From: Chlorokybus atmophyticus
Taxonomy: Eukaryota > Plantae > Mesostigma and Chlorokybus algae
Reading direction: 5' to 3'
DNA length: 64,000 nt
Assembly: GCA_009103225.1 (NCBI GenBank)
Contig: RHPI01002630.1
Location: 1 to 64,000, forward strand
Numbering within the stretch: position 1 is the stretch's first letter; each line of letters opens with the position of its first letter. Under the pieces are notes generated by a model. That model was not told where the DNA came from. It saw nothing but the letters and a program-made list of their open reading frames with translations, and did not search any database. Shown piece by piece: positions 638-34,146 of this stretch. The position numbers were made by a program, and so were the translations under genes.

Positions 638-3600
638 ATGAATCATTACGGCCAGAACGCCGCAATAACAGCTGCGCAGCTGTTGTTGGCGTTGCTTGTA
701 AACTCCAGCATTGCGGCGTAGCTGGCCTAAGCTGGCGTTCACCTTGAATGCTACCTGTTGTCACGTTTGCTGGCGTACACTTTTTCTTGGAGTTTGCAGC
801 TGTAGACGGCCTGACTTCCATGGCGGCGAACATGTGGACAGCTGCAAATACTAGTCAGGCCATCGGTGCTTGCATGACGACATGCAAGCACCGATGGCCT
901 GACTACCACATGGTTATTAAGTTCATAAGCATCATTTGGATTACGATTCATACCCTCGTGTGCGCAGGCTGCATCGGCACCAGGCTGCCCATGCTGCTAC
1001 ACCGTGTTAGCCAGCCAGGGGCCTTATAACGTCATTGAAGGTGGACCCAACAGCTTCAAGGTATCCTTAGATGAGTTTCTGTGTGCCAATGCTTTCGAGA
1101 GCGCCACAACACCTGGGGACGTCACCACCGTGACACCCTTTGCTGGCGGTCAGCAGGTGCGTGGCCACACATGGGCAACGATCATGTCTTGCTATGCATT
1201 GCAGATTGGCTTTCATGATTAAGTCTGCAAGGCTGGCGGGTTAAAGGGCCAGAACATGTTGACATGCATGCTTAGGTGGTGATCCCCTGTCCAAATGCCG
1301 GTGCTGAAGCTGTTGCATACACCAACACCACGTGCCAGCGGTTGGGGGCAGCTTTGGATGCGGGCTGCCAATACGCCTCCGTGGCAATCTCCCCAAAAGC
1401 AGGGTGCAGCATCGATTCTGCAACAGGAACCTGCAGCTGCGCCCCGGCAGGTTCTGCTCCTCCCGCAGCAGCGCCAGTCAGCTCAACACCACCGCCATCG
1501 CCACCCACATTGTCACCGCCACCCTGCCGTATCTGCGGTGCGGGCCAGTGGCAATTGCGTTGTGTTTGGAAATATACAGTCTCCTTGCGTGAGAGGAAGG
1601 GAGGGGGCACGCCAGGCAGGGGGGGGCAACATGCTGTCATCTGTAGCGCAACCATATGTTCAACGAGCCAGTCCTTATGAAAGCAGCATGCATAACAGCA
1701 ACAACCGCAGCGTGGACATGTGTTTACACTGCTACTTGTACCACATTGTGGTCGTCGTTACATTGAGTGCTTGCCGCAGCTGTACACGATGTGTGCGCAA
1801 TGTGTTGAGGGACTCTGACTAGCCATTACGCAGGTGGGAAACTTGCTGGCGTTATCATTGGCAGCGTTGTCGGAGGGTGCTTGGTCGTTTGGCTCTGTTA
1901 TTGGCTCTGGCTCCACGGAAAGAGCCTGCAAACGTGCTGCTACTCTGGAGGTACTCACATGGCAGAGCAACCTTGTTATGCTGCAATCACTAGGCTAAGC
2001 ATTTGTAATTGATCGATTCTAAACTGCGTTTGTGGTGCTGCTTGCAATCTCAAGTAAACGCTCCCTAGCGTAGTGTTCTTTGAATCATTGGATTAGAAGC
2101 GAACTGCATTAGAACCAGCCACCTGTTGTATCATTATTTCCGTGGTGCTGCACGCAGGTTATGGTACGCCATCGCGTACGGCAAACGGTGATCACAATGG
2201 GGCTAAGCGTACTAGTAGCACCACAACCAATGCACCTGCAGCCATTGCGAGTGTGGCAAAAAGCAAAAACCAGCCTGGTCTTGAATTGATCGCCATGCAT
2301 GCATCGTCGGGGCCAGCAGGTGAGCCGCACTGCGCCATTATGCTGCACGTGTTGCACGTGTACACACAACACCTGGGGCAAATTGTGAGGCTTTTCAAAG
2401 TGAAGGATGCCTGCGCTGTACAAGTCAATTGCAACAGGCTGTTGTCTACTGTTGACTGGAATCAGCTCAAACCAGCAGTCAGGCATCAATGCAGATGGGA
2501 CTAAGCCTTCTAGTAGCACCACAACCGATGCGGCTGTATCCATTGCAGGTGCGAGAGAAGCAAAGAACCAGCCTGATGGTCTTGAACTATTGGTCCCGCA
2601 TGTGTCACCGGCGAACCACACGTATCTCAATCCGGCCACTCCTAACAATGCTGCTATTGCGTGAGTTCAACTACAGCTTTCCTTGCAATGCATGCAGAGC
2701 AATCCTGTTGCGACATATGCTGCACCGTGCTTGTACCATGTTGCATGTGCTGTGGCAAGTAGGCGGCACGAACAAGAGGCAACAGGGGCGCTGTCTGCGA
2801 CGCCAGCAGCAAGATTGACAGTGTTTATCAGCTACTGCCAGTTCGACAAGCATCACGCAGAGCGCGTGCGGAGACTTGCCGAGCAACTGCAACGAGACAA
2901 CATATACGTCATTGTGGACTACAAGAATAAGTACCAGTCATGGCCGGCTTTTGTTGGGCAGATGCTGAACGATGGCACCAAGGTACTGCTTGTCACGTCA
3001 ATCTAGTAGTGAACACCTTGCGCATGGTCGCTGTCGTCAACAATCCCCAACCTCTGGCAGCTTATGCAGTAAGCAGGCACATCTGCATGACAGCAATGCA
3101 TTGTGATCGGTTTGCTGATTACTCGTAGTACTTCAGGTGATCGTTGCCTGTGATGAGCATTATGAACGGTACTCATTAAAAGAGCCAACCGCAGCTGATG
3201 AGGTGGGAGCGGGAACGCACGACGAGTATACGAACATACTGAACAGGGTTTATGAGGAGCAGAATCTCTCTGGGTGGTTGGTTCCAGTCATCTTCCGGCC
3301 TCCCGGAAACAGAAACCACGTACCTGCGCAGATTCGGAAGTTCAACTACTACACCCTTGTCAATGAGCAGGCAAGTTCACAGAGTGTAGTGCATTTGCTC
3401 CAAGCTGCACATATTATTACAAGGACTTGCAGCATGCGCCTACTCACATTAGCAATACTTGACTGCGCGTTTGTATCAACATGGGCCGCATGGTTTTGTC
3501 TTCATCAGAATACCTGGGTTGGTTATCAAACCCTCGTTGAGCGCTTGGGAAGTGTTCCGGCCTTCGCGCACCCCTTGTCTCATAGGTATGCGTTTCGGCC

Positions 3601-4339
3601 GGTTTTGCAATTGACGTGCAGTGACCTACCACATGACCTACCACATGACACATGTACGCTCAGTGCATTTTCTATTTGCAGTCCCCCAGACCCATCAAGA
3701 GCGGGCGTTGTTGGCATCACTGGAGCAGCATCACCGGAGCAGCGGACACTTGAGACAAAGCTTACAGACCAGTGGCTCAAGGAGATACAAGATCCCATGG
3801 ACACAATAGCAGACTTCACGGAAACCTCTGCAGACCATTACGCCAAATTCAGAGCGTATCGCGGTGGTGATGACAGCCCGCAAGCAGAGCGCTTGAAAAA
3901 GATCGAGCGCGCACGCAGGTTAGACGACATGCATATGCATTGCACTTGCATGTTGAGTGCAATTGCAAGCTTGCTGTAAGTACTGATATGTTGCTCGCAC
4001 CAACCTGACAGGGTTTTACAAGACTTCTGGCGGACAGCTTACAAATACTACATGGATGGCATGTTGCCTCCTGACTTTTTCAGCAAATCCAATGTGTGGT
4101 GTGAGCGAGGCAACCATTTTCGGCTGTTGGTTGAGCCGTTTCACATTGCCAACTATTATCGGCAAGAGCTGTGGAAGCAGTGGCCTGTTGGCAATCGACA
4201 TTACCTTGAGGCAGACAATCGGCCAGAGTACTACACGTTTTTGGAGCTGCTATACGAGGAACATTATAAGACTGCACCGCCGTCGTCCACAGAACATGCG
4301 TTGCAGGAAATGGATGCCATTGAAGCAAACTTATGTTGA
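638..4339 (+). CDS. Predicted single-pass membrane protein: signal peptide, Cys-rich ectodomain, Pro-rich stalk, TM, SEFIR (TIR-like) domain, EDS1-type EP domain (~674 aa, 11 exons)
   Basis: Manual splice model: 638-717, 1015-1156, 1276-1537, 1834-1950, 2158-2319, 2495-2660, 2763-2982, 3137-3370, 3509-3585, 3682-3918, 4012-4339. Total 2025 nt, all junction phases consistent, no internal stop. Exon 1 (MNHYGQNAAITAAQLLLALLVNSSIAA) has a weak donor, and the exon 3 donor is uncertain. Exons 4-11 are well supported by motifs. Confidence 0.78.
1834..1950 (+). other. Transmembrane-helix exon of the receptor-like gene
   Basis: Translates GGKLAGVIIGSVVGGCLVVWLCYWLWLHGKSLQ, a typical type-I membrane anchor. 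Flanked by cag (1831-1833) and gt (1951), phase 1 on both sides. Too short for the ORF track. Confidence 0.8.
2821..3570 (+). other. SEFIR/TIR-like domain (exons 7-9)
   Basis: VFISYCQFDKHHAERVRRLAEQLQRDNIYVIVD matches the SEFIR N-terminal consensus (VFISYS...H...V..LA..L...GIDVILD). It is followed by K|VIVACDE, GAGTHDEY..I, LVPVIF and the C-terminal GYQTLVERL..VP. Confidence 0.85.
3371..3508 (+). other. GC-AG intron
   Basis: Donor cag|GCAAGT and acceptor ttcatcag. Removing 138 nt joins SEFIR NEQ to NTWVGYQTLVERL. The GC donor is conserved (cag|GCAAGC) in the paralog at ~24940. Confidence 0.7.
3820..4270 (+). other. EDS1-family EP domain (exons 10-11)
   Basis: After removing intron 3919-4011: HYAKFR...ERARRVLQDFWRTAYKYYMDGMLPPDFFSKSNVWCERGNHFRLLVEPFHIANYYR...HYLEADNRPEYYTFLELLYEEH. 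This is colinear with the EDS1/PAD4/SAG101 EP motifs YYDSFK, R.ELAGFW, LP.DF, W...YRRLVEPLDIANYYR and Y...GRP.RY. Confidence 0.9.
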
Positions 4340-11770: not shown

Positions 11771-14700
11771 GTGCAGTTCGTGCGTGCGTGCCGTTCAGTT
11801 AATATCTCATTAACAGGTAAGTACCCATACCCATACCCAGACATTGCAACTACGACAAACACATACGGCAAGGAGCTCGAGCACATACGCATACCTGCGT
11901 TCTGTTGTAATTGTCGTGCATGTGCAGGAATGCTGCTTGAGCCGGAGGGCATCAGCTTCGACGCGCCCATGAGCCTTGACAGCTGAAAGTAGTGGTCCAA
12001 GGTGCGTGTGCGCATGCGCGCGCGGGGGGGGGGGAGGGGAGGAGGGACGCTTGTGTTTGCAGGTGTGTGCGGGTGCTCTCTGTATGGACATGCGTGTGCA
12101 TGTCATGGTTCTGGAATCTCTAACATACCATTGCCACAGCGTTGAATTGCAATTGAGCAATGGCTAGGAAACACTTGTGTGACACGCACGACATGATTTC
12201 GACAGGGCTTGGGAATATGCAGTCGACCGTCCGGAGGGCCTCGTTGCCGTTCGCCAAAGTGTATTGCATGTGCAAACTTTTGCAGAGGATTGAAGGATGC
12301 CATCAGCTTGCGGCAACAGTGGAGACATTTTCAACAACATGGACGTTGGCAGGTTTGTGTGCTGTCGTGGTTGTCATGGATCATGTGTGTGCGCGCGCAT
12401 CTGTGCTGGGTGAGTACGTGGGTGAGAGTTGATTACGCTTAACAAACAGCGCATTGTGATAGCCGCCAACTGAAGCCTCATTCAGCCCTGCGCACAATGA
12501 AACCTCGCCAGCCGCAGCAGTTGAAGGCGAGCGTGTGACAGCGGTACCGTTATTAGCAAGTTGTGAGGATCCTGGCGTGCAAAATGAGGCGCGCGGCACG
12601 ACACTGATGACAAAGTCGGCAGCGAAGCTTGTGTGGATGAGACTAGCAAGCAGCGTGGTGAACACCACACACGATGGCTTGACAGGTCTGATGTGAATTT
12701 GGCGGCTTACACACGGCGTCATGAACTGCCTGACACGCATGCGCATGCTAACTTATGTAATTTGCAGCGTACTTGGGGATTGCACACGTGATGACGATGG
12801 ACTTCAAGAGGAGCAGGAAGAGGGAGCAGCAGAGGAGTGGCTAGGGGAGGACTTCAAGCAGGCAGGTGGTGAAGACCATGTGGACTTGTTTGCCGAAGAT
12901 CTCAGTCACCTTCATCAAGTACCGTTGTATGAGAATAGCAGCTTGTCAATGGAAATGGCTTCTCTGCTGCTTCTCATTCACAAACTTAAAAGTCAATCGA
13001 GTGCAGAGGGTCTGGATCAGCTGGCGATGTTCTTGCACGCATGCATGCTACCTTCCGACAACTTACTTCCCACAAGCAAACGGCAGTTGCTGCATGCTCT
13101 GAAGCACATTGCCCTGCCCACAATCAAGTTCGACGTGTGCGTTAATGACTGCGTTCTGTTTGCCGGTGAGGTCGAAGATAAGGAGGTCTGCCCGCAGTGC
13201 AACGAACCGAGGTGCGTCTTCATGTTGCATGTGCTTCCTTGACCTTAACTTGTACCAGCTCAGACATGTTGTCCTGCACCACAGGTTCAAAGGCACCATG
13301 GATAAGCAAAAACCTCGCAAAGTTTATCACTGCATGCCGCTCATACCACGCATCAAGCGCGCCTTTCGCCTCCGACATTTTGCAGCAAACCTCAGCTATC
13401 ATAAACGCAACCGCTCCAGCGACCCATGGATGAGGAGCATCTACGATTCTCCTACCTGGACGGAACTTGAAGATTTATACCCTGAGCTACGGCAAGAACC
13501 GCGCCACCTACGCTTGGGCTTTTCAACTGATGGGGTCAGCCCTTTCAAACGAGGTCCTTCAGCTCAGAGCACGTGTTCAATGTGGCCTTTGACAGTCTTT
13601 TGTTACAATATTCCTCCTTGGCTTACCTTCAAGCGAGAATACATGTGGACTGTAGGTATAATACCTGGTAAGTTGCGCGCGCGCGCACGCATGCATTCAC
13701 GCACGCAAACACGCAAACACGCACAGCAGCATGCCATTGAAGTTTTGCAATGTTGCATTGAGCAGGCCCTGGAGAGCCAAAAAACCTTAGCACGTACATC
13801 ATGCCACTCGTGAAGGAGCTCATGCGCCTCTGGGATGAAGGTGTGGTGGTGCATGACGTGGCGCCAGCACCAGGCCTGCCAGCTGAGTTCACAGTGAAGG
13901 CGATATTGATGACTTGTTTACATGATTATCCAGGTCTTGGTAAAACAGCTGGTAGACAGATCTGTGGTCGCATTGCCTGCATAGTGTGCGGTCCAAACTA
14001 CCAAGGGGAATACGTCTCTTGGTTAAGAAAGTGCGTGTTTATGAACCATCGTCGCTGCTTGCCAGAAGGTCATGCATTTAGGCTCAGCACCGGATGGGGC
14101 TCAACAGAGACGGCACCACCTCCAGCTCCTTTCTCCAATGGTGACGTCATGCGCGCAGCGATTGCTGGAGAGACATACGAAGGGCCAGCTAATCAGCACC
14201 CCGCAGTGCTAACTGGCGTCAAAGGCATCTCGCCATTTGCTCTACTGCCCTATTGGAATCATGTCCCGGGCCATCTAATAGACCGCATGCACTGCCTTTC
14301 AAACGCCATCAAGAAGATTGACTTGTGTCTTACAGGCAAAGAAGGGAACACATTGCGCGACAGGTGACACGTTGTAAGTGAGAGATTTGAAACAGGCCAA
14401 TGCTAAGGTTGATTGCATTACAGGTACGAGTTCATGGAGAGAGGTGTAATAGAGGAGCTATGGCCAATCATGAAGACAAACCGGCAAGGAGAGGCGTACT
14501 ATGTTAGGCCACCTGCACCTTATGTGTTTACAAAACAGGAAATGGAGCAAGTCCGACAAACATGGGTCCCCATGCGTTACCCTTCCGGATTCGGGGGTCG
14601 AGCATTGGCTGGTGTGCTCTCGGGAGGGGGGCGATACAAGGCAAAGACTCACAACTGGCACAACATAGGTATGTAATTACAGGTATACATGTGGTTGTCA

Positions 14701-17419: not shown

Positions 17420-18264
17420 CTTTACACACGCTGCCAATGTGCGGTTTTGCGCTGACCAATGTCCTTGGAGCAGCGGTTGCAGTACACCTCGTCCAACAAG
17501 AACTCTATCGCCGCCAACTGTGTTGTCAAGAGCTGTCGCTTTGTCGGGCCCGTCGAACCCCAGCTTTGCTTCAAACTCGCCAGCGCCCGTCTGTGCAGGG
17601 CTGTGGCCTTGCCGTAGTCGTGATCCTGATCAATAGCAACTGCTTTGCAGATCTTGAAAGCATAGCCAACATGACGAGCCTTGGCGACGGTGCAAGATGT
17701 GTTCGAAACTGCGCAAATTGCTCTGCTCCTTGCAGCGTGGGAAGGCTACACAGCCCTGGACCACCCACTGGTGACCAAGAGATGCGACTGCCATTGTAGT
17801 CAGAGCACCAAGCCTTGCCACGGGTGGTGTATTCAGCGATTGGGTGGGTCGCCTGACATATAGCCGTCACAGTCAGTACACCAGCAGGTGCTTAACACCA
17901 TAACCATCGCCTGCAGTGTCAGCAACATGTGTGTAGGTCGGTGTCTTTAAGTGGGTGCGCGTGCGTTGAGTGTCTGTGAGTGAAGTCATAGTCCACGCAC
18001 TGCCAGTTTACAGTACAAGGAATGCTGCCCTGTGCCAAGCGTGTGAGCTCAAGTGTGCCCATGTCAAGCATATAGGCACAAGGCTAGGTAGATGGGCGAG
18101 TCTTGATAGGAAATGTAGGGCGCACGCAAGGCGGTCTGGCGACCAAGATCAGCCGATGAGCAAGCCGGTTCGCAATTTGGGGAAGCTAGCTGTGGCTAGT
18201 TTGGGAAACAATGTACACTCCGACGCATGGTGGCCTGAGCTGAGCCAAGCTTCCCTCCCCCCCC

Positions 18265-18327
<63 letters not shown>

Positions 18328-18540
18328 NCATTGGTGCATTGATTATGATGATGATGGTGGGAGCTGCAGTAGGGGACCACGTTTGCCATTATGGCTCTGG
18401 CATAATGAACACCAGAGGGATCTGCTCCAAGGACAGCGGTCAGCGCTCGCCGTACAATAGCAGCGCTTGCATTGCCATATCCTGGAAGAGGCCATACCTT
18501 TCCCCAAACCTGCCTTCCATGACAGCGATCTGACTGAAAG
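17420..18540 (-). pseudogene. Possible degenerate TPR-repeat gene remnant
   Basis: Frameshifted fragments DYGKATALHRRALAS/EAKLGSTGP and AAIVRRALTAVLGAD resemble the kinesin-light-chain type TPR consensus (A..LY.RAL...E..LG..HP). No intact ORF. Confidence 0.3.
18253..18327. repeat. Poly-C (poly-G on minus) homopolymer tract ~70 nt next to an N
   Basis: Directly visible. Its length is unreliable. Confidence 0.95.
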
Positions 18541-18824
18541 CGTGCAGCGCTGGCTGTTAGTGTAACAACAACAGCTATTACTGTGCTTAGTTTCCACCCC
18601 AGAAAGGGTGAACAGGTTCATCACACATGATGTCCCATCCCCTTCACAATGTAATATTCAATGCATATAAGATGCTATGATGTTCTTGAGGTGTGCGTCT
18701 CACAACTTGTAACAAAACTTTACTCGACACTTGTATACTATACATGAAGGCAAGTCTCTGTTAACCCTATGCGCATGTGTGATCATGCACGTGCAAGTTG
18801 CATGGCGCAGCCGCATCACCCCTG

Positions 18825-19562
18825 TCACAGGCTACCAACCATTTGCCGCATAGCTATCCTTAGTTGGTTAAGGCTATCCTTCCAGCGAAGCATCATTGGC
18901 TGACGGTTGTCACTGCTGAGGCTGTGCGCCTCAGCCAGTTCCTTTGCTCTAGGTGGGACACGGGTGGGGTAAAGCTGCTTCCAAGCTTCATCAAGGGAGC
19001 TCTCCACCGTCTCATCTTTGCGATTGTACACTTGGCAGTACAACTCTTGCAGGAGGTAGTAGCGTCTTGGCCGGCTACAACTGGCGGCTGGGTGGCTGCG
19101 GAGGTAATGCGGGGGGTTCTGTCTCGTGGTATTATCGCGCCCGTACCATTTAGCAATATCGAAGGGCTCAACAGCTACGCGATAGTCGTTACCACGCTGT
19201 AGCCATGTGCTGTTCCTTGAAGACAGGAACCCAATAGGAAATGATCCGCTGTCATGAACATCTGTTACCCAGTCCCAAAACCCTGCGAGCAAGCGTCGGG
19301 CGTCTTCAACTTGCTGGATTTCAGCATCTGCAGGGGCTGTCCTTTTCCTGCCAACTCTGAAGCGAACATAACAATCTTGGTATTTGTCTCTGTAGCGAGA
19401 AACAATCGACATGGCCTGAATCATGTCTTTGGTGTACTGCGTGTTCAACTGAAACATCAACTGCAGCTTGCGGTCGCGGCGGCCAAACCACAGATTGATC
19501 AGCGAAAGAACTGTTCCGAGCGCACCTAATACAGCGCCGAGAATGCTGATTGAGTCCGCCAT
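18825..19562 (-). CDS. Intronless membrane-anchored EP-domain protein (245 aa)
   Basis: N-terminal hydrophobic helix SISILGAVLGALGTVLSLINLWF followed by RRDRK. Then EDARRLLAGFWDWVTDVHDSGSFPIGF...WLQRGNDYRVAVEPFDIAKWYG...HYLRSHP...RPRRYYLLQELY, the full set of EP motifs (LAGFWD, EPLDIA, RPRRY). ATG start, open frame. Confidence 0.88.
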   Translation of the reverse strand: MADSISILGAVLGALGTVLSLINLWFGRRDRKLQLMFQLNTQYTKDMIQAMSIVSRYRDKYQDCYVRFRVGRKRTAPADAEIQQVEDARRLLAGFWDWVTDVHDSGSFPIGFLSSRNSTWLQRGNDYRVAVEPFDIAKWYGRDNTTRQNPPHYLRSHPAASCSRPRRYYLLQELYCQVYNRKDETVESSLDEAWKQLYPTRVPPRAKELAEAHSLSSDNRQPMMLRWKDSLNQLRIAMRQMVGSL

Positions 19563-20949
19563 GCCGGATGGTGCAAATTGACACTGCAGCTCGCCCAGCG
19601 CTGCCCTGTACGGAGTTGGAATGGCTTAATGGCATGATGCGTCCATGCAAGCGAGTAGACTGTTCGTGTACACTCTGTGACATGATACACGCACAATGCA
19701 AACACATAACTAGTAAGCACAGCACAGAGTATGATAGTGTGTAAGGGTGCTGTCGACTGTAACAATGTCCAGAAATGGTTGTTGCCAAGCGGAATGGCCA
19801 CGAAAGGACACCCACGCAGTAGTAACATACCTGCATTTTTGAAAACGCTGCCCCCTTGGACATGATACAGACACAAACTTTAATGTAGATTCGGTCCTTA
19901 CCATTTAATCACACATGCAGTCCCGCGCATACATCTTTGCACGTGCTCCCTAACACACACGACTCTTTCTCTCACTGACACTTGCATGCAGTTCAACTAC
20001 ATGATGCATGTTCGCTAGCACACTCACCCCACACGCAGCGTCACCAATATACTTTTACCCCCCACACACACGCACATCCTCACTCTTACGCACTTAGACA
20101 GCAAGCTGGACTTGACACAAGCTTTCAAGGAGAAGCTCTAGAGTGGTCAACAGCTGGATGCTTGCAAGAATGAATGCATGCGTGCAAGTGTGGGGTAGAG
20201 AGCATGGAAAGCATGAAAGCACGACTGCGGAGCGGCGGAGCGGAGCGGCCAACCTGCGCTGCAGCGGTAGGTCCCAGGTGTAGAGGCAGCCAGCCGCCAG
20301 GCAGCGATGATGACCCCTACGACTGCACGGAAGACGACCAGGCTGCCGCCGCCCCCGGCCAGCATGTCCAGCTAAGACAACCCCACTTGCCTTGACTTCT
20401 TCCTGCCGAAAAGAGTTTGCTAAGCAAGAGGCATGCACCCTCCCTCTCGTAATAAGACTAGGAGCTAAGAGAATAGAGGGTGAGTCTACCCTCGAACATA
20501 AAAATGTTAGTGTTAGCTCAGCTAGTTTAGCTGAAGCACAAATCATCAATGTCACACATACAGGTCGCGACCGGCGAGGTCCGGTCGGGACCGACACGGG
20601 ACTGACATGTTCAGCCTACAATTGGCTGGGCGCGAATAGGTAGAAGCCGTTGGATTGGAGCATTAACTGATTTATGAAGTCCATGGGACATGTCCAGCAA
20701 CACGTGACATTTTCAGAAACAAATGTAAAGTGTTCACTGGAGAAATGCACAATGAGCATACCGGTATGTACAAGCGTGCAACCTAAATACAAGCAAACAC
20801 AAGTCAAACAACTCTGTGTCTGTATTGCAAAGGGAGGCCTTCACATTAGGATGGCTACTGTGCTATTTATGAAAAAAACAGTGTTAAATGTTATAGCTTG
20901 TTGAAGTACATGTATAGGCGGCGCCTACATGTAGTTGGTACGATCAGCT

Positions 20950-21100: not shown

Positions 21101-23989
21101 ACTTAGTAGCATAGTATATAAGACACTGTATACTGCTTAATACAGTGGGTCGCACATTGTCTCTATCGTTGGCGTGCTCGCTGCACTTGTCCTTAGTGTA
21201 TGCACACTTGTATGTAGGAGGCAAATACACACACACTAGGCGCATCACTAGTTCTCTACAAACAGTACAGTAGAAAGTATCAAAAAGCGGACTGTTTTGG
21301 CCACCAAGTTGCAAACTATGTGATAATGATGTATAGTCGTGCCATATATGGTTGCAAGCGGAATTTGAAGGCCTACACGAGAAAATTAATGTTGAGATTT
21401 ATGGATATATGGTGTAGCATACCCGGATTTTCAAAGTTGTACGAAAATTGCAGCACAGTAGCCTCAATGGGTAATCATGAAATAACTCATGCTATAAGCA
21501 TGTCATGGCTACCAACCTTGCAATAGCATTAATACATGCTAGCAAACACATGTTGTACTCGCTTGCGCACACATCATCACATTTGAAATGTTATTTAAGT
21601 GATAACACTATTGCACATGGCGCAGCCGCAGGCTGCATTCTTATAAGCATGTTTAAACGCCATGCTCGTGTGCCGATCATGCCAACGAGTAACTCTTCAT
21701 GAATGTCAACGTCATAAAGGATGCCTTCCCAAGAGTGTTTGATTTTTTGAGGTTTACATTTATGGTAGCATGTTATAGCAGTTGCATTAAAATAGTACTG
21801 AAATGCAGTATAGTTACCGGCCAGCCTGTATTAAGCAATTGCTCATAAGCTGAACCAAAGACAGAAAACATTGTTACGCCTTTTATACTAGCCTTAAAGC
21901 TGGTTTTCATATGCTGGTTTTGAGATTGATAGATACAAGTCCATATTAATTGGATTGACAACATAATCCACTTCGGCAAGATCAAAGCTTGGTGAGTAGG
22001 GGGTGCGTCACCTCTGCAGATTGCGTCATCAAAATCATCTACGTTTGTAATGCATATCGGCGTGAGTAAAGATGTTTCTTGGTGGGGCTCTAAATTACGA
22101 TGGTGGCACAAGTTCCGCACTGATATGCACATTACTGTTATTGCCAGTACATACTTGCGGGATTCAGGTTAAGGAGGAGGCGGAGAAGGATGAAATGGCG
22201 TTGATAGTATTGATTGCGTGCATGAGTTAGGCTTGCGAATTCGAATGGACGACAACCGCAAGGTTGAGCGCCGCCTACGAGGTGAACATGAATGGGCGGT
22301 TGGTGGGCTCGATGGGTTATTTATCTTATCAGAGTCGCGGCTGTGCTTAATTAACAAGTTTTATTGCGGTGTCAACTGCAGAGCGCGCACCGTACGTACT
22401 GGCATTCTTGGCATTCTCATCATGCGCGCATGTATGAAGCTGTGCTGAAGGTATTGACTCAATTCGGCAAATCTGTCTTAAAGTTCGAAGCTTTTCCGCT
22501 TCCATCCGTCTGTATATCACGACATCAGAATACATGAACCCAAGTCTAACGCATGCAACACGCGCTCATACAAATACACACGCGCACTACGCAACACAAT
22601 TTTGCAACCTCACCCCAACCCCTACCCACCCAACACACAGATTATTCCACACTATGTTACGGCGGGGGGTCCGGCCGTCCAAGCCATAAAAGACCATGGT
22701 GGTAATTATGGCTATTCTATTCTTATGAGGATTTATAGTTATTCAAGCCCCTTCCAGAGGGCTATCGTAACACACTAACACTTAACTATGCGCGCATATG
22801 GTTGTTGGACGGTTTGTTGACAAGCTTTGGGTTACCGCATACATGTGTACAAATTCATGATCTCAATGTGATTTATCTATTTTGTACATGCCTGCTAAAC
22901 ATGTCAAAGGTGACGGTGCGGTTATCGCAAAATTAATCGACCTGCTTTGATTTGCTACCCACAAGTGTACGTTTTGCAAAACTTAAGCTTATTGTTGCTT
23001 GCTTGTCGTTCAATGCATGTGCTTATTGACGGCGCGCAACTTATGAATCATAAAGACCTTCCATAATCAACATGTTACGCATTCAATGTGGACTTAATGT
23101 GCTCGCTGCAAGCTGTTAAAGTGGGTCGACTCTCTTTTGTATACAGACAAATCAACTTGTTGTGGCAACACAGGTGTTGCGTATCCACCGTTGATAAGCA
23201 TTGAAAAGTAACATTCGAGCAAAATGTGGTCGCATGTGACACTTATGGTTGCAGCCATAAGTAGTTGCATGTGCAACATGACTGTCAACTGAACAAGTTG
23301 TTGTACATTCTTGATGACGGCATCAGCTCAGGTTTTGTTGACCTCTACACGCTGATGAATCACTGAGTGACCCCGCCCCTTGCTATAGGGCTATGCCAAA
23401 ATAAGTACAACGACTGTTTAAAGCGTGATTGCAACATGCAGTATGCATGCAGCCTATTTAGATGCGAGCATTCTATTGGTCTCGTTTCTCCAGTCTTGTG
23501 GCTAGCTCATTGTGCTATGTCATTCCTCTAAAGATGAGCCGTATAGCCGTAACGCGGTTCAACGATGCTGCTTGTTCCGCGAAATGTGTGAGCAACGTCG
23601 ACGCTTTCAAGTGCAAAGAATGTAACAACAATGTTGCAATGTTTGTAACTATATGACTGCCAGCATGCATCAACTTTGATTGGCACGTGCTGCAGCAAAT
23701 GCATCATCTCTATGAATATTGTGATTGGTGGGATCGGCATATCAAGTACTGCATAATGCATGCACAAGACAACCACAACCAACATACAGAAACGCCTATG
23801 CCAAACAGTTTTAACAGCATACAAGAGAAAGGCAGCTTTGACAAGTGTTCGGTAGAATCCTTCAATGACATCAACATGATGATGCTCATAATTACTTTAA
23901 TCGACAAATTTAATTAATATATATCCTACCAAAGAGGCCTTGAACTTGCACAGCAGGTAAGGAGTTTGCTTCAGTAGCCTCCAACACAT

Positions 23990-25000
23990 GTTGTACAGAC
24001 GACAACGATACCAATGGAATCTTATCATGTTTCTTATACTGCAGCTCGAACACCGTGTAGTGCTTGGGTCGTTTTTTCACCCTGAGGTAATTTTAATTAC
24101 CAATAGGCCACTTTTTCCACAGTTCGAGCCGGTGGTAGTTGGCTATGTCAATCGGCTCAACCACAAGCCAAAACGTGATGCCTCTCGCACACAAGATATT
24201 GGACCTGCCGATAAAATCAGCAGGCAACATGCCAGCGACATGCCATTTGTATGCTGTACGCAAGAGATCCTATACAACCTTGTCATGTCAGGTTGGTGCG
24301 GAGATTTCATCAATAAGCATGCTTTTAATTGCACAAAATTTTAAATTGCAATGCATATGCATGTCGTGTCTTGCGTGCACTAAATCTTGTTAACCGCTCT
24401 GCTTGCGAGCTGTCATCATCGGCACGATATGCTTTGAGTTTGGCATAATTGTCCACAGAGGTCTGCACAAATGCTTGGATCAAGAGCTTCGCTATTGTGA
24501 TGTCCTCATTGTGCCACACATTGTCTGTCAACTCTATTTTGTGTTCTTACAACTCGGCGATATCAAACACATACACTCCCGTTGGCTCCGAATCGCTCCA
24601 AGCGTCAAGGCATTATGGCTACACGTGTCGTGTGATAAGACAAGCAGCCATTTGCATGGCAGATGCAAATTAACCTCCGCAATGCATAGCTAGCATGGCA
24701 TACCTATGTAAGAAGAGCTGCACGACGGCCGAAAGACTTCCCAAGCGCTCGACGAGGGTTGTATAATCAACCCCAGAGTTTTTATTGCATGAAGATGAAA
24801 TTAAACCCCGATGTAATCATCGCGCACAGATGTCATATAATGCTATATTGCTTTAACGCATGCTGCAAGCCCTTTCCACGACAGGTGTGCACAGCTTGGA
24901 GCCAATGCATTACCGTAATGCATTGCGTGAGGTGTGAGCTTGCCTGCTAACCTTCAAGGATGACGTAGTTGACTTTCGAAGCTGTGCAGCAGTCACAACG
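23990..25000 (-). pseudogene. Decayed paralog of the SEFIR-EP gene (homologs of the end of exon 8 through exon 11)
   Basis: Minus strand encodes GMLPADFIGRSNILCARGITFWLVVEPIDIANYHRLELWKKWPIGN*NYLRVKKRPKHY and NYAKLKAYRADDDSSQAERL. Nucleotide homology extends to exon 9 (accctcgtcgagcgcttgggaagt), the end of exon 8 and the intron sequences. In-frame stops (TAA 24095-24093, TAG ~24270) and loss of the exon-10 GT donor. Confidence 0.88.
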
Positions 25001-29235: not shown

Positions 29236-32200
29236 TGTTGAAGGACTAGCATGCACATGTAGTTAAGGCAAGCATGGACACACAGAGACAGAGCTACCGC
29301 CACCAGAGCATACACAAGTCACATCACATTCATCTATTACAAGTTGTCCGCTGGTTCTTATACCAGCCAGTTACACACACGTCTACGTTTGCAAGCACTG
29401 CGTAAGCTATACTCAGCTTTTTGACGCGCTCTAAGCTGCGTTGTCTTCCTTACAACTAGAGCTTTTAAACAAGCTCTTACACGCCTAATATGAGTAAGTA
29501 TACGCGGAGATACAAAGCAGTTAGTAAGGCTCCAGTCTGGAGTCCGGAGTCTGGTCCGACGACGCCAACTTGCTAAGTCCGGACCTAGTGCTCGTCCTTA
29601 CAACCTTCTACTCCTGTGTGGAGGGTCGATGCTGATCGTATGTAGGAATACTCTCAACACTCCCACGCGAGCAGCTTGACCTCCAACGCTTGCTCCTGTA
29701 GTTAAACACAAATGCCAAGTCCTGCGCAACAAGTCTTGAACTTGAGCGATGACAATGGCTTTGTCATGAAGTCCGCCAGCATGCCCTCAGTGTTGCAGTA
29801 CTGGAACTCCACCTCCTTCCTTGTGACTCTGTCACGCACAAAGTGATGCATGACATCAATGTGCTTCGTCCTTGCCGAGGCGATAGGATGCTTCAACAAC
29901 TTGATGGCTCCTTGGTTGTCACAGTTGATGACGATGCACGCCATGGGGTGCTCCAAGTCTGCCATGAGCTTGCGAAGCCAGAGTGCCTCCTTCACTGCTG
30001 CTGCCGCTGCCATGTACTCAGCCTCTGATGTAGATGCTGCTGTTGTTGGCTGCAGCCTGCTGTTCCAGCTCACCACGCCTCCGTTCAGCTTGAAGGCGTA
30101 GCCTGTAGTGGACCTCCTGCTGTTGAGGTCACCAGCAAAGTCTGAGTCGCAGTAGCCCTCCAACTCAATGCTCCCGCTCCCAAACTTGATGCCAACTGTT
30201 GCGCTCCCAGCAACATAGCGTAGTACTCCCTTTGCTCTCCAGTGCTCCATGCTCGGTGCAGACATGTAGCGAGCAAGTACTCCCACAGCATGTGCAACAT
30301 CGGGACGTGTGCACGCTGCCAGATAGAGCATGCTGCCTACCAGCTCACCATATGGATAATGAGCCTTGTCGAGTACCTCCTCATCCTTTGCCTTGATGAG
30401 GGCAGTGCCAAGTGCCAACGGTGTGCTCTTAGTCTTCGCTTCAGTGAGCCCAAACTTGGTGACGAGTCTTCTCACCATCTGCTCCTGACTGATCTTGATT
30501 GTACGTGCAGCCCTGTCGCGCTCAATCAACAACAACATGCCAAGGAACCACTTGGCCTCTCCAAGATCACGAACTGAGAATGCTTGCTGTAGAGCAAGTT
30601 TCGTCTCCTGCAGGTGGTGCACCTGCCTGGCGGTGATGATGATATCATCAACATACACGAGCAGCCAGACCTTGTTGTCTACATGGATGAAGAGCCTAGG
30701 GTCTGCAAAGGATGCGGTGATGCCAAGTGCCTCCAGCTCCTTGGTGAGCTTGATGTGCCACATACGCGGTGCCTGTCGCAGCCCATACAGTGCCTTGATT
30801 AGCTTGCACGCTGTGCCTCTCTCCCCTTCTTCATATCCAGGTGGTTGCTTGATGAAGATCTCCTCTTCCAGCTCTCCGTAGAGGAAGGCAGTCTTCACAT
30901 CCAAGTGATGCAGCTCTAGGTCTTCAGCAGCAACCACAGCTAACAGTGCACGGAAGGTGGTGTGCTTACTTGCGGGTGCAAATACTTCGTCAAAGTCCAC
31001 ACCTTCCTGCTGCAAGAAGCCCTTTGCCACCAGTCTTGCCTTGTAGCGCTCAATGTTGCCCTGACCATCACGCTTCACCTTGAAGACCCATTTCACTGAA
31101 ATGGTCTTCACTCCTTGCGGAATCTGCTCCAATGACCAAGTGTTGTTGGCATGGAGTGACGCAATCTCCTCGTCCATAGCACGCTGCTATTGCTCCGCAT
31201 CTGGTGCTAACAATGCCTCCTCGTAGGTGCTTGGCTCCTCATTGTGCACACTGGCGACGTGTGCCTTGTGTAAGAAGTCAGGTGCCTTTCTCTCCCTCAT
31301 TGGGTATCTCCGAGCTGCGTGCTCTTGCTGCAGGTGCGACTGCTTGTCTGCCACAGTAGAGTCCTGCTCACCCTTATCATCAATGATGGCCTTGCCTGTA
31401 GCCTCCACTGTTTCAAGATGCTCCAGCTGTGCTTCATCTTCAGGAAAGAAGCCTGCTTCTGGTTGGGATAATCCCTCGTGGAAAACCACCTCTCTGCTCA
31501 CAATGATCCTCTGAGTGTCCTCGAGCAAGATCCTGTAAGCGTTGGAACCCGGTTCATAGCCAACAAAGATGCCCTTCCGGCTGACCGGCTCCAGCTTGTG
31601 CCTAAGCTGTTTAGGCACTAATGCATATGCCGTGCATCCAAACACACGCATACCACTCACATCTGGTGTGGCTCCGTAGAAGTGCTCCCACAGAGTCTTC
31701 TGCTCTGAGCTCACCGGAGACCTGTTGCGGATGTAGTTGGCAATGAGTACCGCCTCCTTCCACATACTGTCTTCCATCTTGGTGTCATTGAGCATTGCTC
31801 GAACCCGCTCCAGGAGTGTCCTGTTGAGGCGTTCAGCTGCTCCATTCTGCTGCGGTGTGTAGGGTGCAGTGGTCTCGTGGCGTATGCCCTTGCTGGCGAA
31901 AAACTCCTTCAACTCCTTGTTAATGTACTCCCCTCCTCGGTCACTCCTCATTGCCTTCATCTTGCTGCTATACTGCGTCTCCAACAAGGCCACAACTGTG
32001 CGCACAGCTCCAGCAACTTCTGACTTGAGCGTCAATGGAAAGATGATGGACAGCTTGCTGTAGTCGTCGAGGAATGTAGCAAAGTACCTGGCCCCTCCCT
32101 TCGCCACAATGCGCATAGGGCCACAGACATCCATGTGCACAAGCTCGCAAGGATGCTGACTGCTAAAAGAGAATGATGGGAATGGCATAGCATGCTGCTT

Positions 32201-34146
32201 TGCAACCAGGCATGGTTCACAAAGTGCACCTGATGCATTCTTGAGTTCTTCTGTGCTGAGATGGATGCCCTTGACCATCTTCTCAGCGACAAGGCGAGTG
32301 AGGTTGGCGTATCTGAGATGCCCGAACCTTCGATGCCACAATGTTGGCGACTCCTTGTCCTTCACCACCATGGCTTGAATGTCAATGTTCTGAGGGTGCT
32401 GCTCCACGTGGTAGAGCCCTCTCGGATCAGCGATTCCAACCATGTGCATGACCCCATCAAGGATGACTGTGCAGCCAACCTTCCGAAATAGCATCTCCGC
32501 GCCTAAGCGCTCCGCAACCCTCACAAAAAATAGACTCGCAATAGCCTTAGGAACATGCAGGACATTGCGTAACAACACCTCGCGTAGTGTGTTACCAACC
32601 TTGCACTGGAGTCGTACGTTGCCAACTCCCTCAGCCACCAGTACTTCGCCACCAAAGCCCGCCACCATAATTGTAGACGTCAGCTTCTTGTAGCCCTCCA
32701 TCACCTCCTTGTTTGGTGTGAGATGACGATCGCAGCCAGAGTCCACCACCCAGAAAGCTGTGCCCGCCCTCGAACTGGATGCAGTGAAGGCGACATGTTT
32801 CTCCTTGTGTTGGTGCTTGTTGCCGCTGTTGCTGGTGCTTGCTCTTGGTTGCCCCTGTTGTTTCTTCCTACAGTCCTTCACAATGTGCCCCTTCCAACCA
32901 CACCAGTGGCATGTGAGGTCTTTGTGACGAGGATTGCCTGGCTTGTTGCCCTTGTTCTTCTCTTCGTGGTTGCTCTTCTTCCCGTGCTTGTTGGTGTAGA
33001 AGGCCACGGCATCAGCTTGCGCGTCCTTCTTCATCACCCTCTGCTCCACGGTGAGCAGCTTCGGTAGCACATCGTCCAACGTCAACTCCGATGATGACGT
33101 CTCCAGCAGGGTTGCGACGACCTCGTACTCTGCTGGTAGCCCTGCAACAATGGCCAGCACTACCTCCGTCTCCCCCATGTTGTGGCCGACGTTGATGAGG
33201 TCCGCCCACAGCTCTCTCGCGCGCGCAACATACTTTGTGATGGGTTCTGCTGCCTCCTTCCTGAGTGCGCTAAGCTGCTTGCGTAGATGCAACTTTCTGG
33301 CATTGTTCTTGGCTCTGAAAACGGCTGATAGCTTTTCCCAAGCTTGTCTACCATCTTCACATGCAGTGAGCATGGGAAAGTGATGCGGTTTGCTGTTCAA
33401 CACAAGCAAAGAGTGTGCTTCTGCTGAATGCTCTGACCACACAGTGTTTGCTCCTGGTGTTGGTGGTGGTGCCTTCGGATCAACGTACTTCCACACCTTC
33501 TTGTGGATGAGCAAAGCCTTCATCTCCAAGCACCATGTGTTGTAGTTGTCGGTGTCCAGCTTTGCAATCTGCCCCTTGTCGTAGGTCGCCTCCATCTTTG
33601 TCGTGCCTGCCTTCACTTGCAGTTGACACCCAAGGCTCTGCTACCAACAAGCTACCGTAGTGTAGAAACTACTATGCACACAAGCTAGTCTCACACTCCT
33701 CAAGCGTAGTGTGGGCCCATAACCTGTTGAAAGACTAGCATGCACATGTAGTTGAGGCAAGCATGGACACAGAGACAGAGCTACCGCCACCAGAGCATAC
33801 ACAAGTCGCATCACATTCATCTATTACAAGTTGTCCGCTGGTTCTTATACCAGCCAGCTACACACACGTCTACGTTTGCAAGCACTGCGTAAGCTATACT
33901 CAGCTTTTTGACGCGCTCTAAGCTGCGTTGTCTTTCTTACAACTAGAGCTTTCAAACGAGCTCTTACACGCCTAATATGAGTAAGTATACGCGGAGATGC
34001 GAAGCAGTTAGTAAGGCTCCAGTCTGGAGTCCGGAGTCTGGTCCGACGACGCCATCTTGCTAAGTCCGGACCTAGTGCTCGTCCTTACGACCTTCTACTC
34101 CTGTGTGGAGGGTCGATGCTGATCGTATGTAGGAATACTCTCAACA
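29236..34146 (-). mobile_element. Full-length Ty1/copia LTR retrotransposon (family A)
   Basis: LTRs 29236-29659 and 33725-34146 (TGTTG...CAACA, about a dozen differences by eye). TSD ACTCC (29231-29235, 34147-34151). PBS GGTTATGGGCCCAC at 33724-33711. PPT next to 29660. Confidence 0.96.
29702..33616 (-). CDS. Copia-A gag-pol polyprotein (gag, zf-CCHC, protease, integrase, RT, RNase H), split by one in-frame TAG
   Basis: CHWCGWKGHIVKDC, WVVDSGC, LWHRRFGH..CEPC, VHMDVCGP, RSDRGGEY, ERLNRTL, LDVKTAFL, LVYVDDII, YCDSDFAGD, KHIDVMHHFVRD. Stop at 31189-31187 in EQ*QRAMDEE. Confidence 0.95.

What the first reader, a model, noticed from the sequence alone, without database searches (positions are those of the whole stretch)
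18825..19562. Stand-alone, intronless membrane-anchored EP protein (TM + EP, no lipase domain)
Seen: a 245-aa open frame with an N-terminal TM helix and all EP motifs, including LAGFWD and VEPFDIA, which are closer to the plant consensus than those of locus 1. It has no introns, in a region where other genes are intron-rich. Inference: a minimal EP module, possibly a retrocopy or horizontally acquired. It could be the membrane partner of the receptor at 638-4339, since EDS1-family EP domains work as heterodimers.
Basis: partly seen in the sequence, partly recalled or inferred. Interest (0 to 1): 0.85.

Follow-up and report, generated by a model that had tools for sequence, protein, structure and literature searches.

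The report
Membrane-anchored, lipase-less EP protein in alga
The early-branching green alga Chlorokybus expresses a small protein made of one membrane helix plus the "EP" sensor domain, a domain generally treated as unique to the seed-plant immune hub EDS1. In other algae its relatives sit head-to-head with TIR-NLR immune receptor genes, so the question of how TIR signals are read outside seed plants becomes testable.

Summary
The 245-codon ORF at 18825-19562 (minus) is real, intact and expressed in Chlorokybus atmophyticus (JGI model Chrsp121S01800).

What holds up:
- The N-terminal TM helix is real.
- No lipase-like domain is present anywhere in the transcript or in the 64-kb window.

What does not hold up:
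- The gene is not intronless. An RNA contig shows a canonical 648-nt intron 42 nt upstream of the ATG.
- Retrocopy or horizontal origin is not supported. The nearest relatives are Chlorokybus paralogs, composition matches host exons, and no prokaryotic or viral relatives were found.

The gene belongs to a family of TM-anchored EP "minis". In 6 of 10 distinct lipase-less loci from other algae (one from the named chlorophyte [Myrmecia] bisecta, the rest unnamed), the mini lies head-to-head with a TIR-NB-ARC gene. About 40 seed-plant EDS1-type loci showed no such neighbour. EDS1 ligand-contact residues R425, D469, Y473 and R493 are kept (N472 is Lys here).

Most likely function: a membrane-tethered cytosolic receptor or adaptor for TIR/SEFIR-derived signals. 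Pairing with the SEFIR-EP gene at 638-4339 is plausible but untested.

The scan had already flagged sister genes of this family elsewhere in this genome.

The parts
18825..19562 (-). Coding frame of the TM-EP protein (245 aa plus stop), starting at ATG 19562
   Evidence: ORF list. 100% identical to aa 51-295 of JGI model Chlat1 Chrsp121S01800. Covered by RNA contigs at depth 267 (X1) and 36 (X2), against 2-8 in the flanks.
19482..19562 (-). N-terminal transmembrane helix (aa 1-27), rich in Gly, Ala and Ser (GxxxGxxG), followed by the basic stretch RRDRK
   Evidence: Hydropathy 2.1; five small-xxx-small motifs; net +3 charge after the helix, so the EP domain is predicted cytosolic. AlphaFold models a continuous helix over aa 2-60. 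Sub-threshold holin-like matches only.
18948..19490 (-). EP-domain fold (aa 25-205)
19143..19169 (-). EPFDIAKWY motif (aa 132-140), equivalent to AtEDS1 E466-H474, which carries ligand contacts D469, N472 and Y473
   Evidence: Alignments to PDB chains. Contact residues are taken from preprint 10.1101/2022.04.01.486681. E132, P133, D135, A137 and Y140 are invariant or nearly so across the 75 aligned sequences.
19059..19073 (-). RPRRY motif (aa 164-168). R167 is equivalent to AtEDS1 R493
   Evidence: Alignments. R493 contacts pRib-ADP and is needed for ADR1 recruitment.
18633..18824 (-). 3' untranslated region (approximate end)
   Evidence: RNA contig X2 record 9 spans 18633-19260.
19563..19604 (-). 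Start of exon 2 upstream of ATG 19562. It is either 5' leader or codons 38-50 of the 295-aa JGI model
   Evidence: RNA contig X2 record 15; JGI model P0001.
19605..20252 (-). Intron of 648 nt, GT..AG on the minus strand
   Evidence: Splice joint in an RNA contig with 79 and 91 nt on either side, depth 32. Donor GCAG|GTTGGC and acceptor GGGCAG|CGCTG.
20253..20365 (-). Exon 1. RNA is seen over 20253-20343. The JGI model starts at ATG 20365, which lies beyond the RNA contig's end
   Evidence: GC is 0.69 against 0.525 in the ORF. The N-terminal extensions of the three paralog models are not conserved.
3119..4336 (+).
23913..24546 (-). Context: third EP locus of the window. It is a SEFIR-EP-type relic with an in-frame stop inside the conserved GNRHYLE motif

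Best explanation
Shown:
- The locus is an expressed, spliced Chlorokybus atmophyticus gene.
- Its product is a single-pass membrane protein: an N-terminal Gly/Ala-rich TM helix runs directly into an EP-domain helical bundle.
- There is no lipase-like domain.
- It is one of at least five TM-EP paralogs in this genome.
- It belongs to a wider family of lipase-less, TM-anchored EP 'minis'. These occur in the chlorophyte [Myrmecia] bisecta and on eukaryote-like contigs from unnamed organisms.

Inferred:
- The basic stretch after the helix places the EP domain in the cytosol.
- The most conserved motifs of the whole family are the ones that line the nucleotide pocket of EDS1.
- TM-EP genes are repeatedly paired head-to-head with TIR-NB-ARC genes, and in Chlorokybus EP domains are fused to TIR or SEFIR domains.
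- From these three points, the protein most likely acts as a membrane-tethered receptor or adaptor for a TIR/SEFIR-made nucleotide signal.
- Because the EDS1-type pocket lies between two EP domains, it probably works as a dimer or oligomer, either with itself or with another EP protein.
- The TM helix would then couple the signal to a membrane. The output is unknown.
For: - Identity and expression.
- EP homology: Pfam E 1.6e-8. PDB EDS1 1.6e-5 and PAD4 3.6e-4 with the single sequence. A profile of the three Chlorokybus paralogs alone reaches ~600-aa proteins taken to be seed-plant EDS1 family, for example P0019 at 6e-8 in 1.84 billion proteins.
- EP fold.
- No lipase domain.
- Family and recurrent TM: about 17 clusters at 50% identity have a TM just before the EP core.
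- Named carriers.
- Pocket residues R425/D469/Y473/R490/R493 correspond to R89/D135/W139/R164/R167.
- TIR linkage: a TIR-NB-ARC gene lies divergently upstream in L002 (=L003), L006, L007, L008, L009 ([Myrmecia] bisecta) and L010. That is 6 of 10 distinct lipase-less loci. About 40 lipase-EP (seed-plant-type) loci scanned the same way showed none.
- Fusions in Chlorokybus: P0007 reads TM-EP-TIR-SEFIR-EP, and P0008 and P0014 are SEFIR-EP.
- Lineage-specific duplication: the tree gives SH-aLRT 96 for the clade with P0002 and P0003.
Against: - No TIR or NB-ARC gene lies in this 64-kb window. The only TIR-like domain is the SEFIR of locus 1, 14 kb away across transposon sequence.
- The N472 position is Lys in this copy (Asn in its paralogs). 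The F419 position is Gln. The K478/T482 loop cannot be aligned.
- Without lipase-like domains, the known driver of EDS1 heterodimerisation is missing.
- The start codon is unresolved: ATG 19562 gives 245 aa, ATG 20365 gives 295 aa with a second hydrophobic stretch.
- The runs are labelled 'RNA?' (guessed) and the splice joint rests on one contig.
- The AlphaFold alignment included seed-plant EP sequences.
- No binding, localisation or phenotype data exist.
Confidence: 0.6

Rival explanations
1. Dedicated heterodimer partner of the SEFIR-EP receptor at 638-4339. The TM-EP would supply an 'EDS1-like' half-pocket and the receptor's EP tail the other half.
For: - Both genes lie in one 20-kb stretch, which also holds a third, broken EP gene.
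- The locus-1 EP has His at the D469 position (window sequence). Its SEFIR-EP relatives have Tyr at the R493 position. The TM-EP keeps Asp and Arg, so the two could be complementary.
- Earlier scan notes report another TM-EP next to a SEFIR-EP gene (s1-177155; not re-tested here).
- P0005 (TM-EP) and P0008 (SEFIR-EP) are on the same scaffold with consecutive JGI ids.
Against: - The genes are tail-to-tail and 14.3 kb apart with transposon genes between them, so they do not form a shared-promoter pair.
- In other algae the conserved neighbour is a TIR-NB-ARC gene.
- This gene's closest paralogs are on other scaffolds.
- No interaction model could be run.
Confidence: 0.2
2. Decoy or damper. The membrane-tethered EP domain would soak up TIR-derived signal or bind EP-carrying receptors, holding immunity off. 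This would be analogous to truncated NRG1C in Arabidopsis.
For: - It is a small, sensor-only protein with no obvious output domain.
- The family is expanded, and this copy carries a substitution at one pocket position (Lys for N472).
Against: - The head-to-head pairing with TIR-NB-ARC genes is conserved across distant algae, and the TM anchor is strictly kept. Both fit a required signalling partner at least as well.
- Nothing tested here discriminates between the two readings.
Confidence: 0.1
3. An EP-fold membrane protein with a function unrelated to TIR signalling. Alternatively, a decaying duplicate in a transposon-rich region.
For: - The window is mostly Copia and CACTA sequence and holds one broken EP gene.
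- There is no TIR gene nearby.
- A weak frame-shifting joint (19356-19526) and a low-depth 2-nt deletion appear in some contigs.
Against: - The ORF is intact and expression is high relative to the flanks.
- Identity to P0002 is 72% over the TM and EP parts, with invariant columns concentrated in the EP motifs, while the N-terminal extensions are unconserved.
- The only variant listed in the RNA contigs (19287) is synonymous.
Confidence: 0.07
4. Retrocopy or horizontally acquired gene from bacteria or viruses.
For: The conserved coding part is a single exon.
Against: - A spliced 5' intron is present.
- Composition is host-like.
- The gene nests inside a Chlorokybus paralog clade.
- No relatives were found in prokaryotic or viral collections.
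- The one contig that looked bacterial (L006) is a chimeric assembly with a GC jump from 0.55 to 0.72.
Confidence: 0.03

Closest known systems
EP domain of seed-plant EDS1, PAD4 and SAG101 (Pfam PF18117; PDB 4NFU, 7XDD, 7XEY, 8ZF0)
   Same: - Same signature motifs: ARRxLAGFWD, WLxRGxxYR, VEPxDIAxxY, GHY, RPxRY.
- Equivalents of EDS1 R425, D469, Y473 and R493 are kept.
   Different: [quoted passage not shown]
- An N-terminal TM anchor instead.
- About the last 40 residues of the plant EP domain are not matched.
- The N472 position is Lys and the F419 position is Gln.
- It occurs in a streptophyte alga that diverged long before seed plants.
- Seed-plant EPs form their own clade, apart from all lipase-less EPs (SH-aLRT 99).
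Chlorokybus SEFIR-EP and TM-EP-TIR fusion proteins (P0007, P0008, P0014; locus 1 of this window)
   Same: Same genome, same lipase-less EP core, and many are also membrane-anchored.
   Different: - This gene has no TIR or SEFIR enzyme domain of its own.
- Its EP belongs to a separate clade (P0001-P0004).
- Its motifs are closer to the seed-plant consensus: RPRRY against RPEYY, and LAGFWD against RDFWR.
TM-EP minis of other algae (for example [Myrmecia] bisecta KAK9811653 = P0062; also P0012, P0020, P0052, P0063, P0069)
   Same: Same architecture, TM then EP, in 180-310 aa. Same predicted topology. All hit EDS1_EP.
   Different: - Identity is only 20-28%.
- Most of them sit head-to-head with a TIR-NB-ARC gene. 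This Chlorokybus copy does not.
Bacterial second-messenger receptors with TM effector parts (for example type II Thoeris Macro-TM ThsA, CBASS Cap15, type III CRISPR Cam1). This comparison comes from general knowledge and was not tested here.
   Same: The logic of a small sensor domain joined to a TM helix, encoded next to the signal-making enzyme.
   Different: There is no sequence or fold relationship. PADLOC gave no hit for the window protein and only one weak, unrelated match among ten TM-EP proteins. Membrane disruption by TM-EP is pure conjecture.
Prokaryotic DUF4760 (PF15956): about 130-200 aa, an N-terminal TM plus a helical bundle, function unknown
   Same: Three independent pointers:
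- AFDB Foldseek hit V4NH91, TM-score 0.69 by hit over its full length.
- Atlas search by shape, 0.64 by hit over EP core residues 28-181.
- Atlas feature search, 0.91.

In addition, there is a sub-threshold Pfam match of paralog P0004 (E 0.031, aa 15-107 against profile 3-101 of 141).
   Different: - It is below every significance cut-off.
- Helical bundles match easily.
- The EP signature motif is absent from 185,579 prokaryotic genomes.
- No profile-profile test could be run, because no DUF4760 sequences were available.

Membership tests
EP-domain superfamily (Pfam PF18117 EDS1_EP) | Sequence match to the EP profile above the curated gathering score | tested here: met
   34.8 bits against a cut-off of 23.1, E 1.6e-8, aa 74-178. 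All 75 aligned relatives also match.
EP-domain superfamily (Pfam PF18117 EDS1_EP) | EP helical-bundle fold | tested here: met
   [not shown]
EP-domain superfamily (Pfam PF18117 EDS1_EP) | EPxDIANYY and RPxRY motifs carrying the EDS1 ligand contacts D469, N472, Y473 and R493 | tested here: met
   D135, W139 and R167 are kept. N472 is Lys138 in this copy and Asn in paralogs P0002 and P0003.
EDS1 family in the strict sense (EDS1/PAD4/SAG101) | N-terminal class-3 lipase-like alpha/beta-hydrolase domain joined to the EP domain | tested here: not met
   No Pfam lipase hit. The upstream exon adds at most 50 non-lipase residues. Six seed-plant lipase-like domains find nothing in the six-frame translation of the window.
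EDS1 family in the strict sense (EDS1/PAD4/SAG101) | LLIF helix in the lipase-like domain that drives heterodimerisation | tested here: not met
   The domain that carries this helix is absent.
EDS1 family in the strict sense (EDS1/PAD4/SAG101) | Membership of the seed-plant EP clade | tested here: not met
   The rows labelled seed-plant form one clade (SH-aLRT 99) that excludes all lipase-less EPs. This is a quick tree with a midpoint root. The seed-plant labels rest on length, on two named entries and on similarity to PDB chains.
EDS1 family in the strict sense (EDS1/PAD4/SAG101) | Binding of TIR-made nucleotides between two EP domains, and recruitment of a helper NLR | not testable with these tools
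   This needs biochemistry or multimer modelling.
Algal TM-EP minis (the family proposed here and in earlier scan notes) | A single TM helix directly N-terminal to a lipase-less EP core, with basic residues after the helix | tested here: met
   TM at aa 1-27, followed by RRDRK. The same layout is seen in 20 other proteins.
Algal TM-EP minis (the family proposed here and in earlier scan notes) | A divergently transcribed TIR-NB-ARC neighbour | tested here: not met
   Present at 6 of 10 distinct lipase-less loci elsewhere. Absent from this window. This feature is frequent in the family rather than universal.
DUF4760 (PF15956) | Profile match above the gathering score | tested here: not met
   No hit for this protein. 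Paralog P0004 scores 14.9 bits against a cut-off of 25. There is structural resemblance only.

The most novel reading that the evidence does not exclude
TM-EP minis may be the ancestral, self-contained readers of TIR signals. Binding of a TIR-made nucleotide between EP domains would cluster the glycine-rich TM helices and open or perturb a membrane. One 245-residue protein would then do what EDS1 heterodimers plus helper-NLR channels do in seed plants. The EP domain itself may descend from the prokaryotic TM-anchored DUF4760 family. If so, both halves of the plant TIR-EDS1 pathway would have prokaryotic roots.
Probability: 0.15. Interest if true: 0.92.

Novelty: new variant of a known kind. 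Interest (0 to 1): 0.75.

Why it matters
Plant immunity papers state that EP proteins exist only in seed plants (PMC10834447). A 2026 preprint concedes only 'short EP-like sequences' in green algae, and asks how TIR receptors signal in lineages without EDS1 (10.64898/2026.05.20.726525).

This gene and its family show a confidently folded EP domain in an alga that split off near the base of the streptophytes. The domain is stripped of the lipase part, tied to a membrane, and genetically coupled to TIR-NB-ARC genes in several algae.

That gives a concrete candidate for the missing TIR signal reader outside seed plants. It can be expressed, tested for ligand binding and tested for membrane effects. 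It also gives a starting point for tracing how EDS1 was assembled, for example as a lipase-like domain joined to an older EP module.

Tried and rejected
- The first AlphaFold job used only the three paralogs and gave pLDDT 39, so it was unusable. It was replaced by a 75-sequence alignment.
- NCBIfam gave no hit.
- PADLOC and PHROGs gave nothing significant. There were only sub-threshold holin-like matches to the TM helix and a chance ZorA match.
- The Atlas feature search had recognition below its threshold. Its hits were mostly unnamed prokaryotic clusters, and it was kept only as the DUF4760 lead.
- The look-up of encoding contigs had no record for paralog P0002, so paralog DNA, intron positions and dN/dS could not be compared.
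- P0012's contig had no DNA available.
- The search of earlier findings by sequence returned blanks, as the operators had warned.
- Algal TIR and NB-ARC probes found nothing in the window.
- Bacterial origin was suspected from TetR/ArsR genes on L006. This was rejected because that contig is a chimera with a sharp GC jump at 9 kb.
- The prokaryotic and viral genome scans were negative.
- The literature search did not find the primary report behind 'short EP-like sequences in green algae'. The preprint's reference list is not held.

Full report
**Observation.** The ORF list gives an ATG-to-stop frame of 245 codons at 18825-19562 on the minus strand. It opens with a hydrophobic, Gly/Ala-rich stretch followed by RRDRK, and it contains LAGFWD and VEPFDIA.

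**Is it an EP domain?** Yes, on three lines of evidence.
- The single sequence hits Pfam EDS1_EP at E 1.6e-8, scoring 34.8 bits against a curated cut-off of 23.1.
- It hits PDB chains of EDS1 (1.6e-5), PAD4 (3.6e-4) and, weakly, SAG101.
- A profile of only the three Chlorokybus paralogs, run against 1.84 billion representatives, retrieved 74 proteins. These included ~600-aa proteins taken to be seed-plant EDS1 family.

**Organism, gene model and expression.**
- The protein is 100% identical to aa 51-295 of JGI Chlat1 model Chrsp121S01800, so the genome is Chlorokybus atmophyticus.
- Contigs from runs labelled RNA (a guessed label) cover 18633-19604 at depth 267 (X1) and 36 (X2). The flanks are at 2-8.
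- One X2 contig carries a joint from 20253 to 19604 that skips 648 nt with GT..AG ends on the minus strand, with 79 and 91 nt on either side. This junction matches the JGI model.
- The gene is therefore not intronless. It has an intron 42 nt upstream of ATG 19562.

**Which start codon?** This is unresolved.

For ATG 19562 (245 aa):
- The N-terminal extensions of the three paralog models are unrelated to each other, while the remainder is 65-72% identical.
- In five of five family models with long extensions, a Met sits exactly at the start of the TM helix.
- Many relatives start 0-4 residues before the helix.
- Exon 1 has a GC of 0.69, against 0.525 for the ORF.
- The context at 19562 is ggcATGg, against gacATGc at 20365.

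For the upstream ATG 20365 (295 aa):
- It is in frame and open through the splice junction.
- Paralog P0003 has Leu at the position of Met 51, so that copy must start further upstream.
- The RNA contig ends at 20343, 22 nt short of the model ATG. The transcription start is therefore unknown.

Either start predicts a cytosolic EP domain.

**No lipase part.** The upstream exon encodes at most 37 non-lipase residues of the model's 50-residue N-terminal extension. No RNA contig lies between 20444 and 23000. Six seed-plant lipase-like domains find nothing in the six-frame translation of the whole window.

**Origin.**
- GC3 of the ORF is 0.58, against 0.52-0.59 for the locus-1 exons.
- The nearest relatives are all Chlorokybus proteins: P0002 (64% identity), P0003 (56%), P0004 (38%) and P0005 (33%).
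- In a maximum-likelihood tree of 58 EP domains, the gene groups with P0002 and P0003 (SH-aLRT 96), and then with P0004 (89).
- The rows taken as seed-plant form a separate clade (99). This was a quick search with a midpoint root. The seed-plant labels rest on length, on two named entries and on similarity to PDB chains.
- Scans of 185,579 prokaryotic species genomes and of IMG/VR with the family motif found no relative.
- Retrocopy or recent horizontal transfer is therefore not supported. The gene is a lineage-specific duplicate.

**The family.** The Chlorokybus EP repertoire seen here includes:
- TM-EP minis (P0001-P0005);
- SEFIR-EP proteins (P0006, P0008, and P0014, which also has LRRs);
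- P0007, which reads TM-EP-TIR-SEFIR-EP.

Outside Chlorokybus, about a dozen clusters at 50% identity have the same TM-then-EP layout. One is P0062 of the chlorophyte [Myrmecia] bisecta. That genome also has a protein that UniRef labels 'EDS1 EP domain-containing protein'. One TM-less relative comes from an Ascophyllum nodosum record, and its true source is uncertain.

Charge and sequon patterns are consistent across the family. The N-side is short, acidic or bears N-glycosylation sequons, and the C-side is basic. This places the EP domain in the cytosol. The TM helices are rich in small-xxx-small motifs. That fits helix-helix packing but proves nothing.

**Link to TIR genes.**
- Gene calls and my own six-frame scans show a TIR-NB-ARC gene divergently oriented immediately upstream of the TM-EP gene in L002 (=L003), L006, L007, L008, L009 ([Myrmecia] bisecta) and L010. 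Several also carry LRR, WD40 or a TNL-type winged helix.
- That is 6 of 10 distinct lipase-less loci.
- L001, L004, L005 and L037 show none.
- The metagenome scan served as an unplanned control. About 40 loci with a lipase-like domain directly upstream of the EP (the seed-plant type, GC 0.32-0.48) show no TIR or NB-ARC hit with the same probes. One caveat is that the probes were algal and may be less sensitive to angiosperm TIRs.
- L006 looked bacterial at one end, but it is a chimeric assembly with a GC jump at 9 kb.

**This window.** The window holds three EP loci:
- the SEFIR-EP receptor gene (EP part at 3119-4336, plus strand);
- this gene;
- a third, SEFIR-EP-type relic at 23913-24546 (minus strand), with an in-frame stop inside the conserved GNRHYLE motif.

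No canonical TIR or NB-ARC is present. The rest of the window is Copia elements and a CACTA transposase. This gene and locus 1 are tail-to-tail and 14.3 kb apart.

**Mechanism.** In AtEDS1-PAD4 the ligand pRib-ADP is held between the two EP domains. On the EDS1 side the contacts are D469, N472 and Y473 (in the EPLDIANY motif), T482, K478 and R493 (in RPTRY). R425 is implicated by mutagenesis (preprint 10.1101/2022.04.01.486681).

Profile alignments map these residues as follows:

| AtEDS1 | This protein |
|---|---|
| R425 | R89 |
| D469 | D135 |
| N472 | K138 (Asn in P0002 and P0003) |
| Y473 | W139 |
| R490 | R164 |
| R493 | R167 |
| F419 | Gln |

The K478/T482 loop differs in length and cannot be aligned. 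The most conserved columns across all 75 sequences are W96, E132, P133, D135, A137, Y140 and Y153. These are the FWD motif, the pocket helix and the GHY tyrosine.

I infer that ligand or partner binding at this surface is the conserved function. Together with the gene pairing and the fusions, this suggests that the TM-EP reads a TIR/SEFIR-made signal at a membrane, probably as a dimer or oligomer. I put this at about 0.6. What happens next is unknown. Possibilities are recruitment of another protein, a membrane effect through the glycine-rich helix, or damping of the signal.

**A lead on deeper origin.**
- AFDB Foldseek lists a bacterial DUF4760 protein after the plant entries, with a TM-score of 0.69 by hit over its whole length.
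- The Atlas search by shape lists a DUF4760 cluster at 0.64 by hit over residues 28-181.
- The Atlas feature search had also listed DUF4760.
- Paralog P0004 gives a sub-threshold Pfam match to DUF4760 (E 0.031) covering the TM and the first part of the EP domain.
- Each pointer is weak, and helical bundles match easily. No profile-profile test was possible, so this remains a lead only.

**Known or new?** Ngou et al. 2024 state that EP proteins are present only in seed plants. Their search required both a lipase domain and an EP domain (PMC10834447). Johanndrees et al. 2022 call the EP domain unique to the EDS1 family (PMC9806590). A 2026 preprint notes 'short EP-like sequences' in green algae but 'robust EP domain homology' only in seed plants. 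No paper in the library describes TM-anchored EP proteins or their pairing with TIR-NLR genes. UniRef already auto-labels one algal protein as EP-containing.

Earlier notes of this scan describe sister genes in this genome and reach the same reading (s1-192535, s1-177155, s1-192523, s1-192538, s1-078791). I re-derived the EP fold and the TIR pairing independently here. The finding is a new variant of a known kind. It is not a strict EDS1-family member, because it lacks the lipase-like domain, but it is a clear member of the EP-domain superfamily with a new architecture and a new lineage.

Noticed in passing
window 23913-24546 (-): A third EP-domain locus of the SEFIR-EP type (58-residue stretches match P0008 at E 3e-28). 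It has an in-frame stop replacing the Arg/His of the conserved GNRHYLE motif, and no SEFIR part was detected upstream. It is probably a pseudogene relic, 3.5 kb upstream of this gene's exon 1.
   Followed up: partly
window 4052-4339 (+): The EP of locus 1 reads LLVEPFHIANYY, so it has His at the position of the EDS1 ligand contact D469. Its SEFIR-EP relatives have Tyr at the R493 position (RPEYY). The SEFIR-EP and TM-EP pockets therefore differ at ligand-contact positions.
   Followed up: partly
window 42529-46077 and 52335-55883 (+): Two Copia pol stretches have identical ORF lengths (198, 318, 228 and 372 aa), offset by 9806 bp. This suggests a recent tandem or segmental duplication of a Copia element. 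Further Copia copies lie at 29702-33616 and 58205-63976.
   Followed up: no
window 12721-14367 (+): A CACTA-type transposase (Pfam Transposase_21, E 5e-18) lies between locus 1 and this gene.
   Followed up: no
window 18248-18331: A long poly-G/poly-C run containing an N (an assembly gap or homopolymer problem) lies about 300 nt beyond the transcript's 3' end. Reads appear cut there.
   Followed up: no
window 19287: RNA contigs show C instead of G at very high depth (1141 of 1438 in X1). The change is synonymous (Leu92). It sits in the stretch that is identical among paralogs, so it probably reflects collapsed paralog reads or strain differences.
   Followed up: partly
window 19356-19526: A weak second joint in run X2 only skips 169 nt (GT..AG on the minus strand, 28 nt on the shorter side). 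It would remove codons 13-69 and shift the frame. It may be a minor splice form or an assembly artefact. X3 also shows a low-depth 2-nt deletion at 19118.
   Followed up: no
P0007 (JGI Chlat1 Chrsp5S06985, another scaffold): This 640-aa model reads TM - EP - canonical TIR - partial SEFIR - second EP. It may be a real multi-domain protein or two merged neighbouring genes.
   Followed up: no
L006:1-14931: This ENA contig joins a eukaryote-like part (GC 0.51-0.61, with NB-ARC, TIR pieces and TM-EP) to a high-GC bacterial part (0.70-0.73, with TetR, ArsR and SDR genes) at about 9 kb. It is a chimeric assembly, not a bacterial EP gene.
   Followed up: yes
AFDB clusters: A0A1D3CUH7, A0A7S0DJB3, C5KH53: Short (207-269 aa) unnamed or 'Transmembrane protein' entries match the model at probability 1.0 and TM-score 0.48-0.62 by hit. 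Their organisms are not shown. From memory the accession ranges suggest alveolates or MMETSP protists. If so, the TM-plus-EP-like layout may extend beyond green algae.
   Followed up: no
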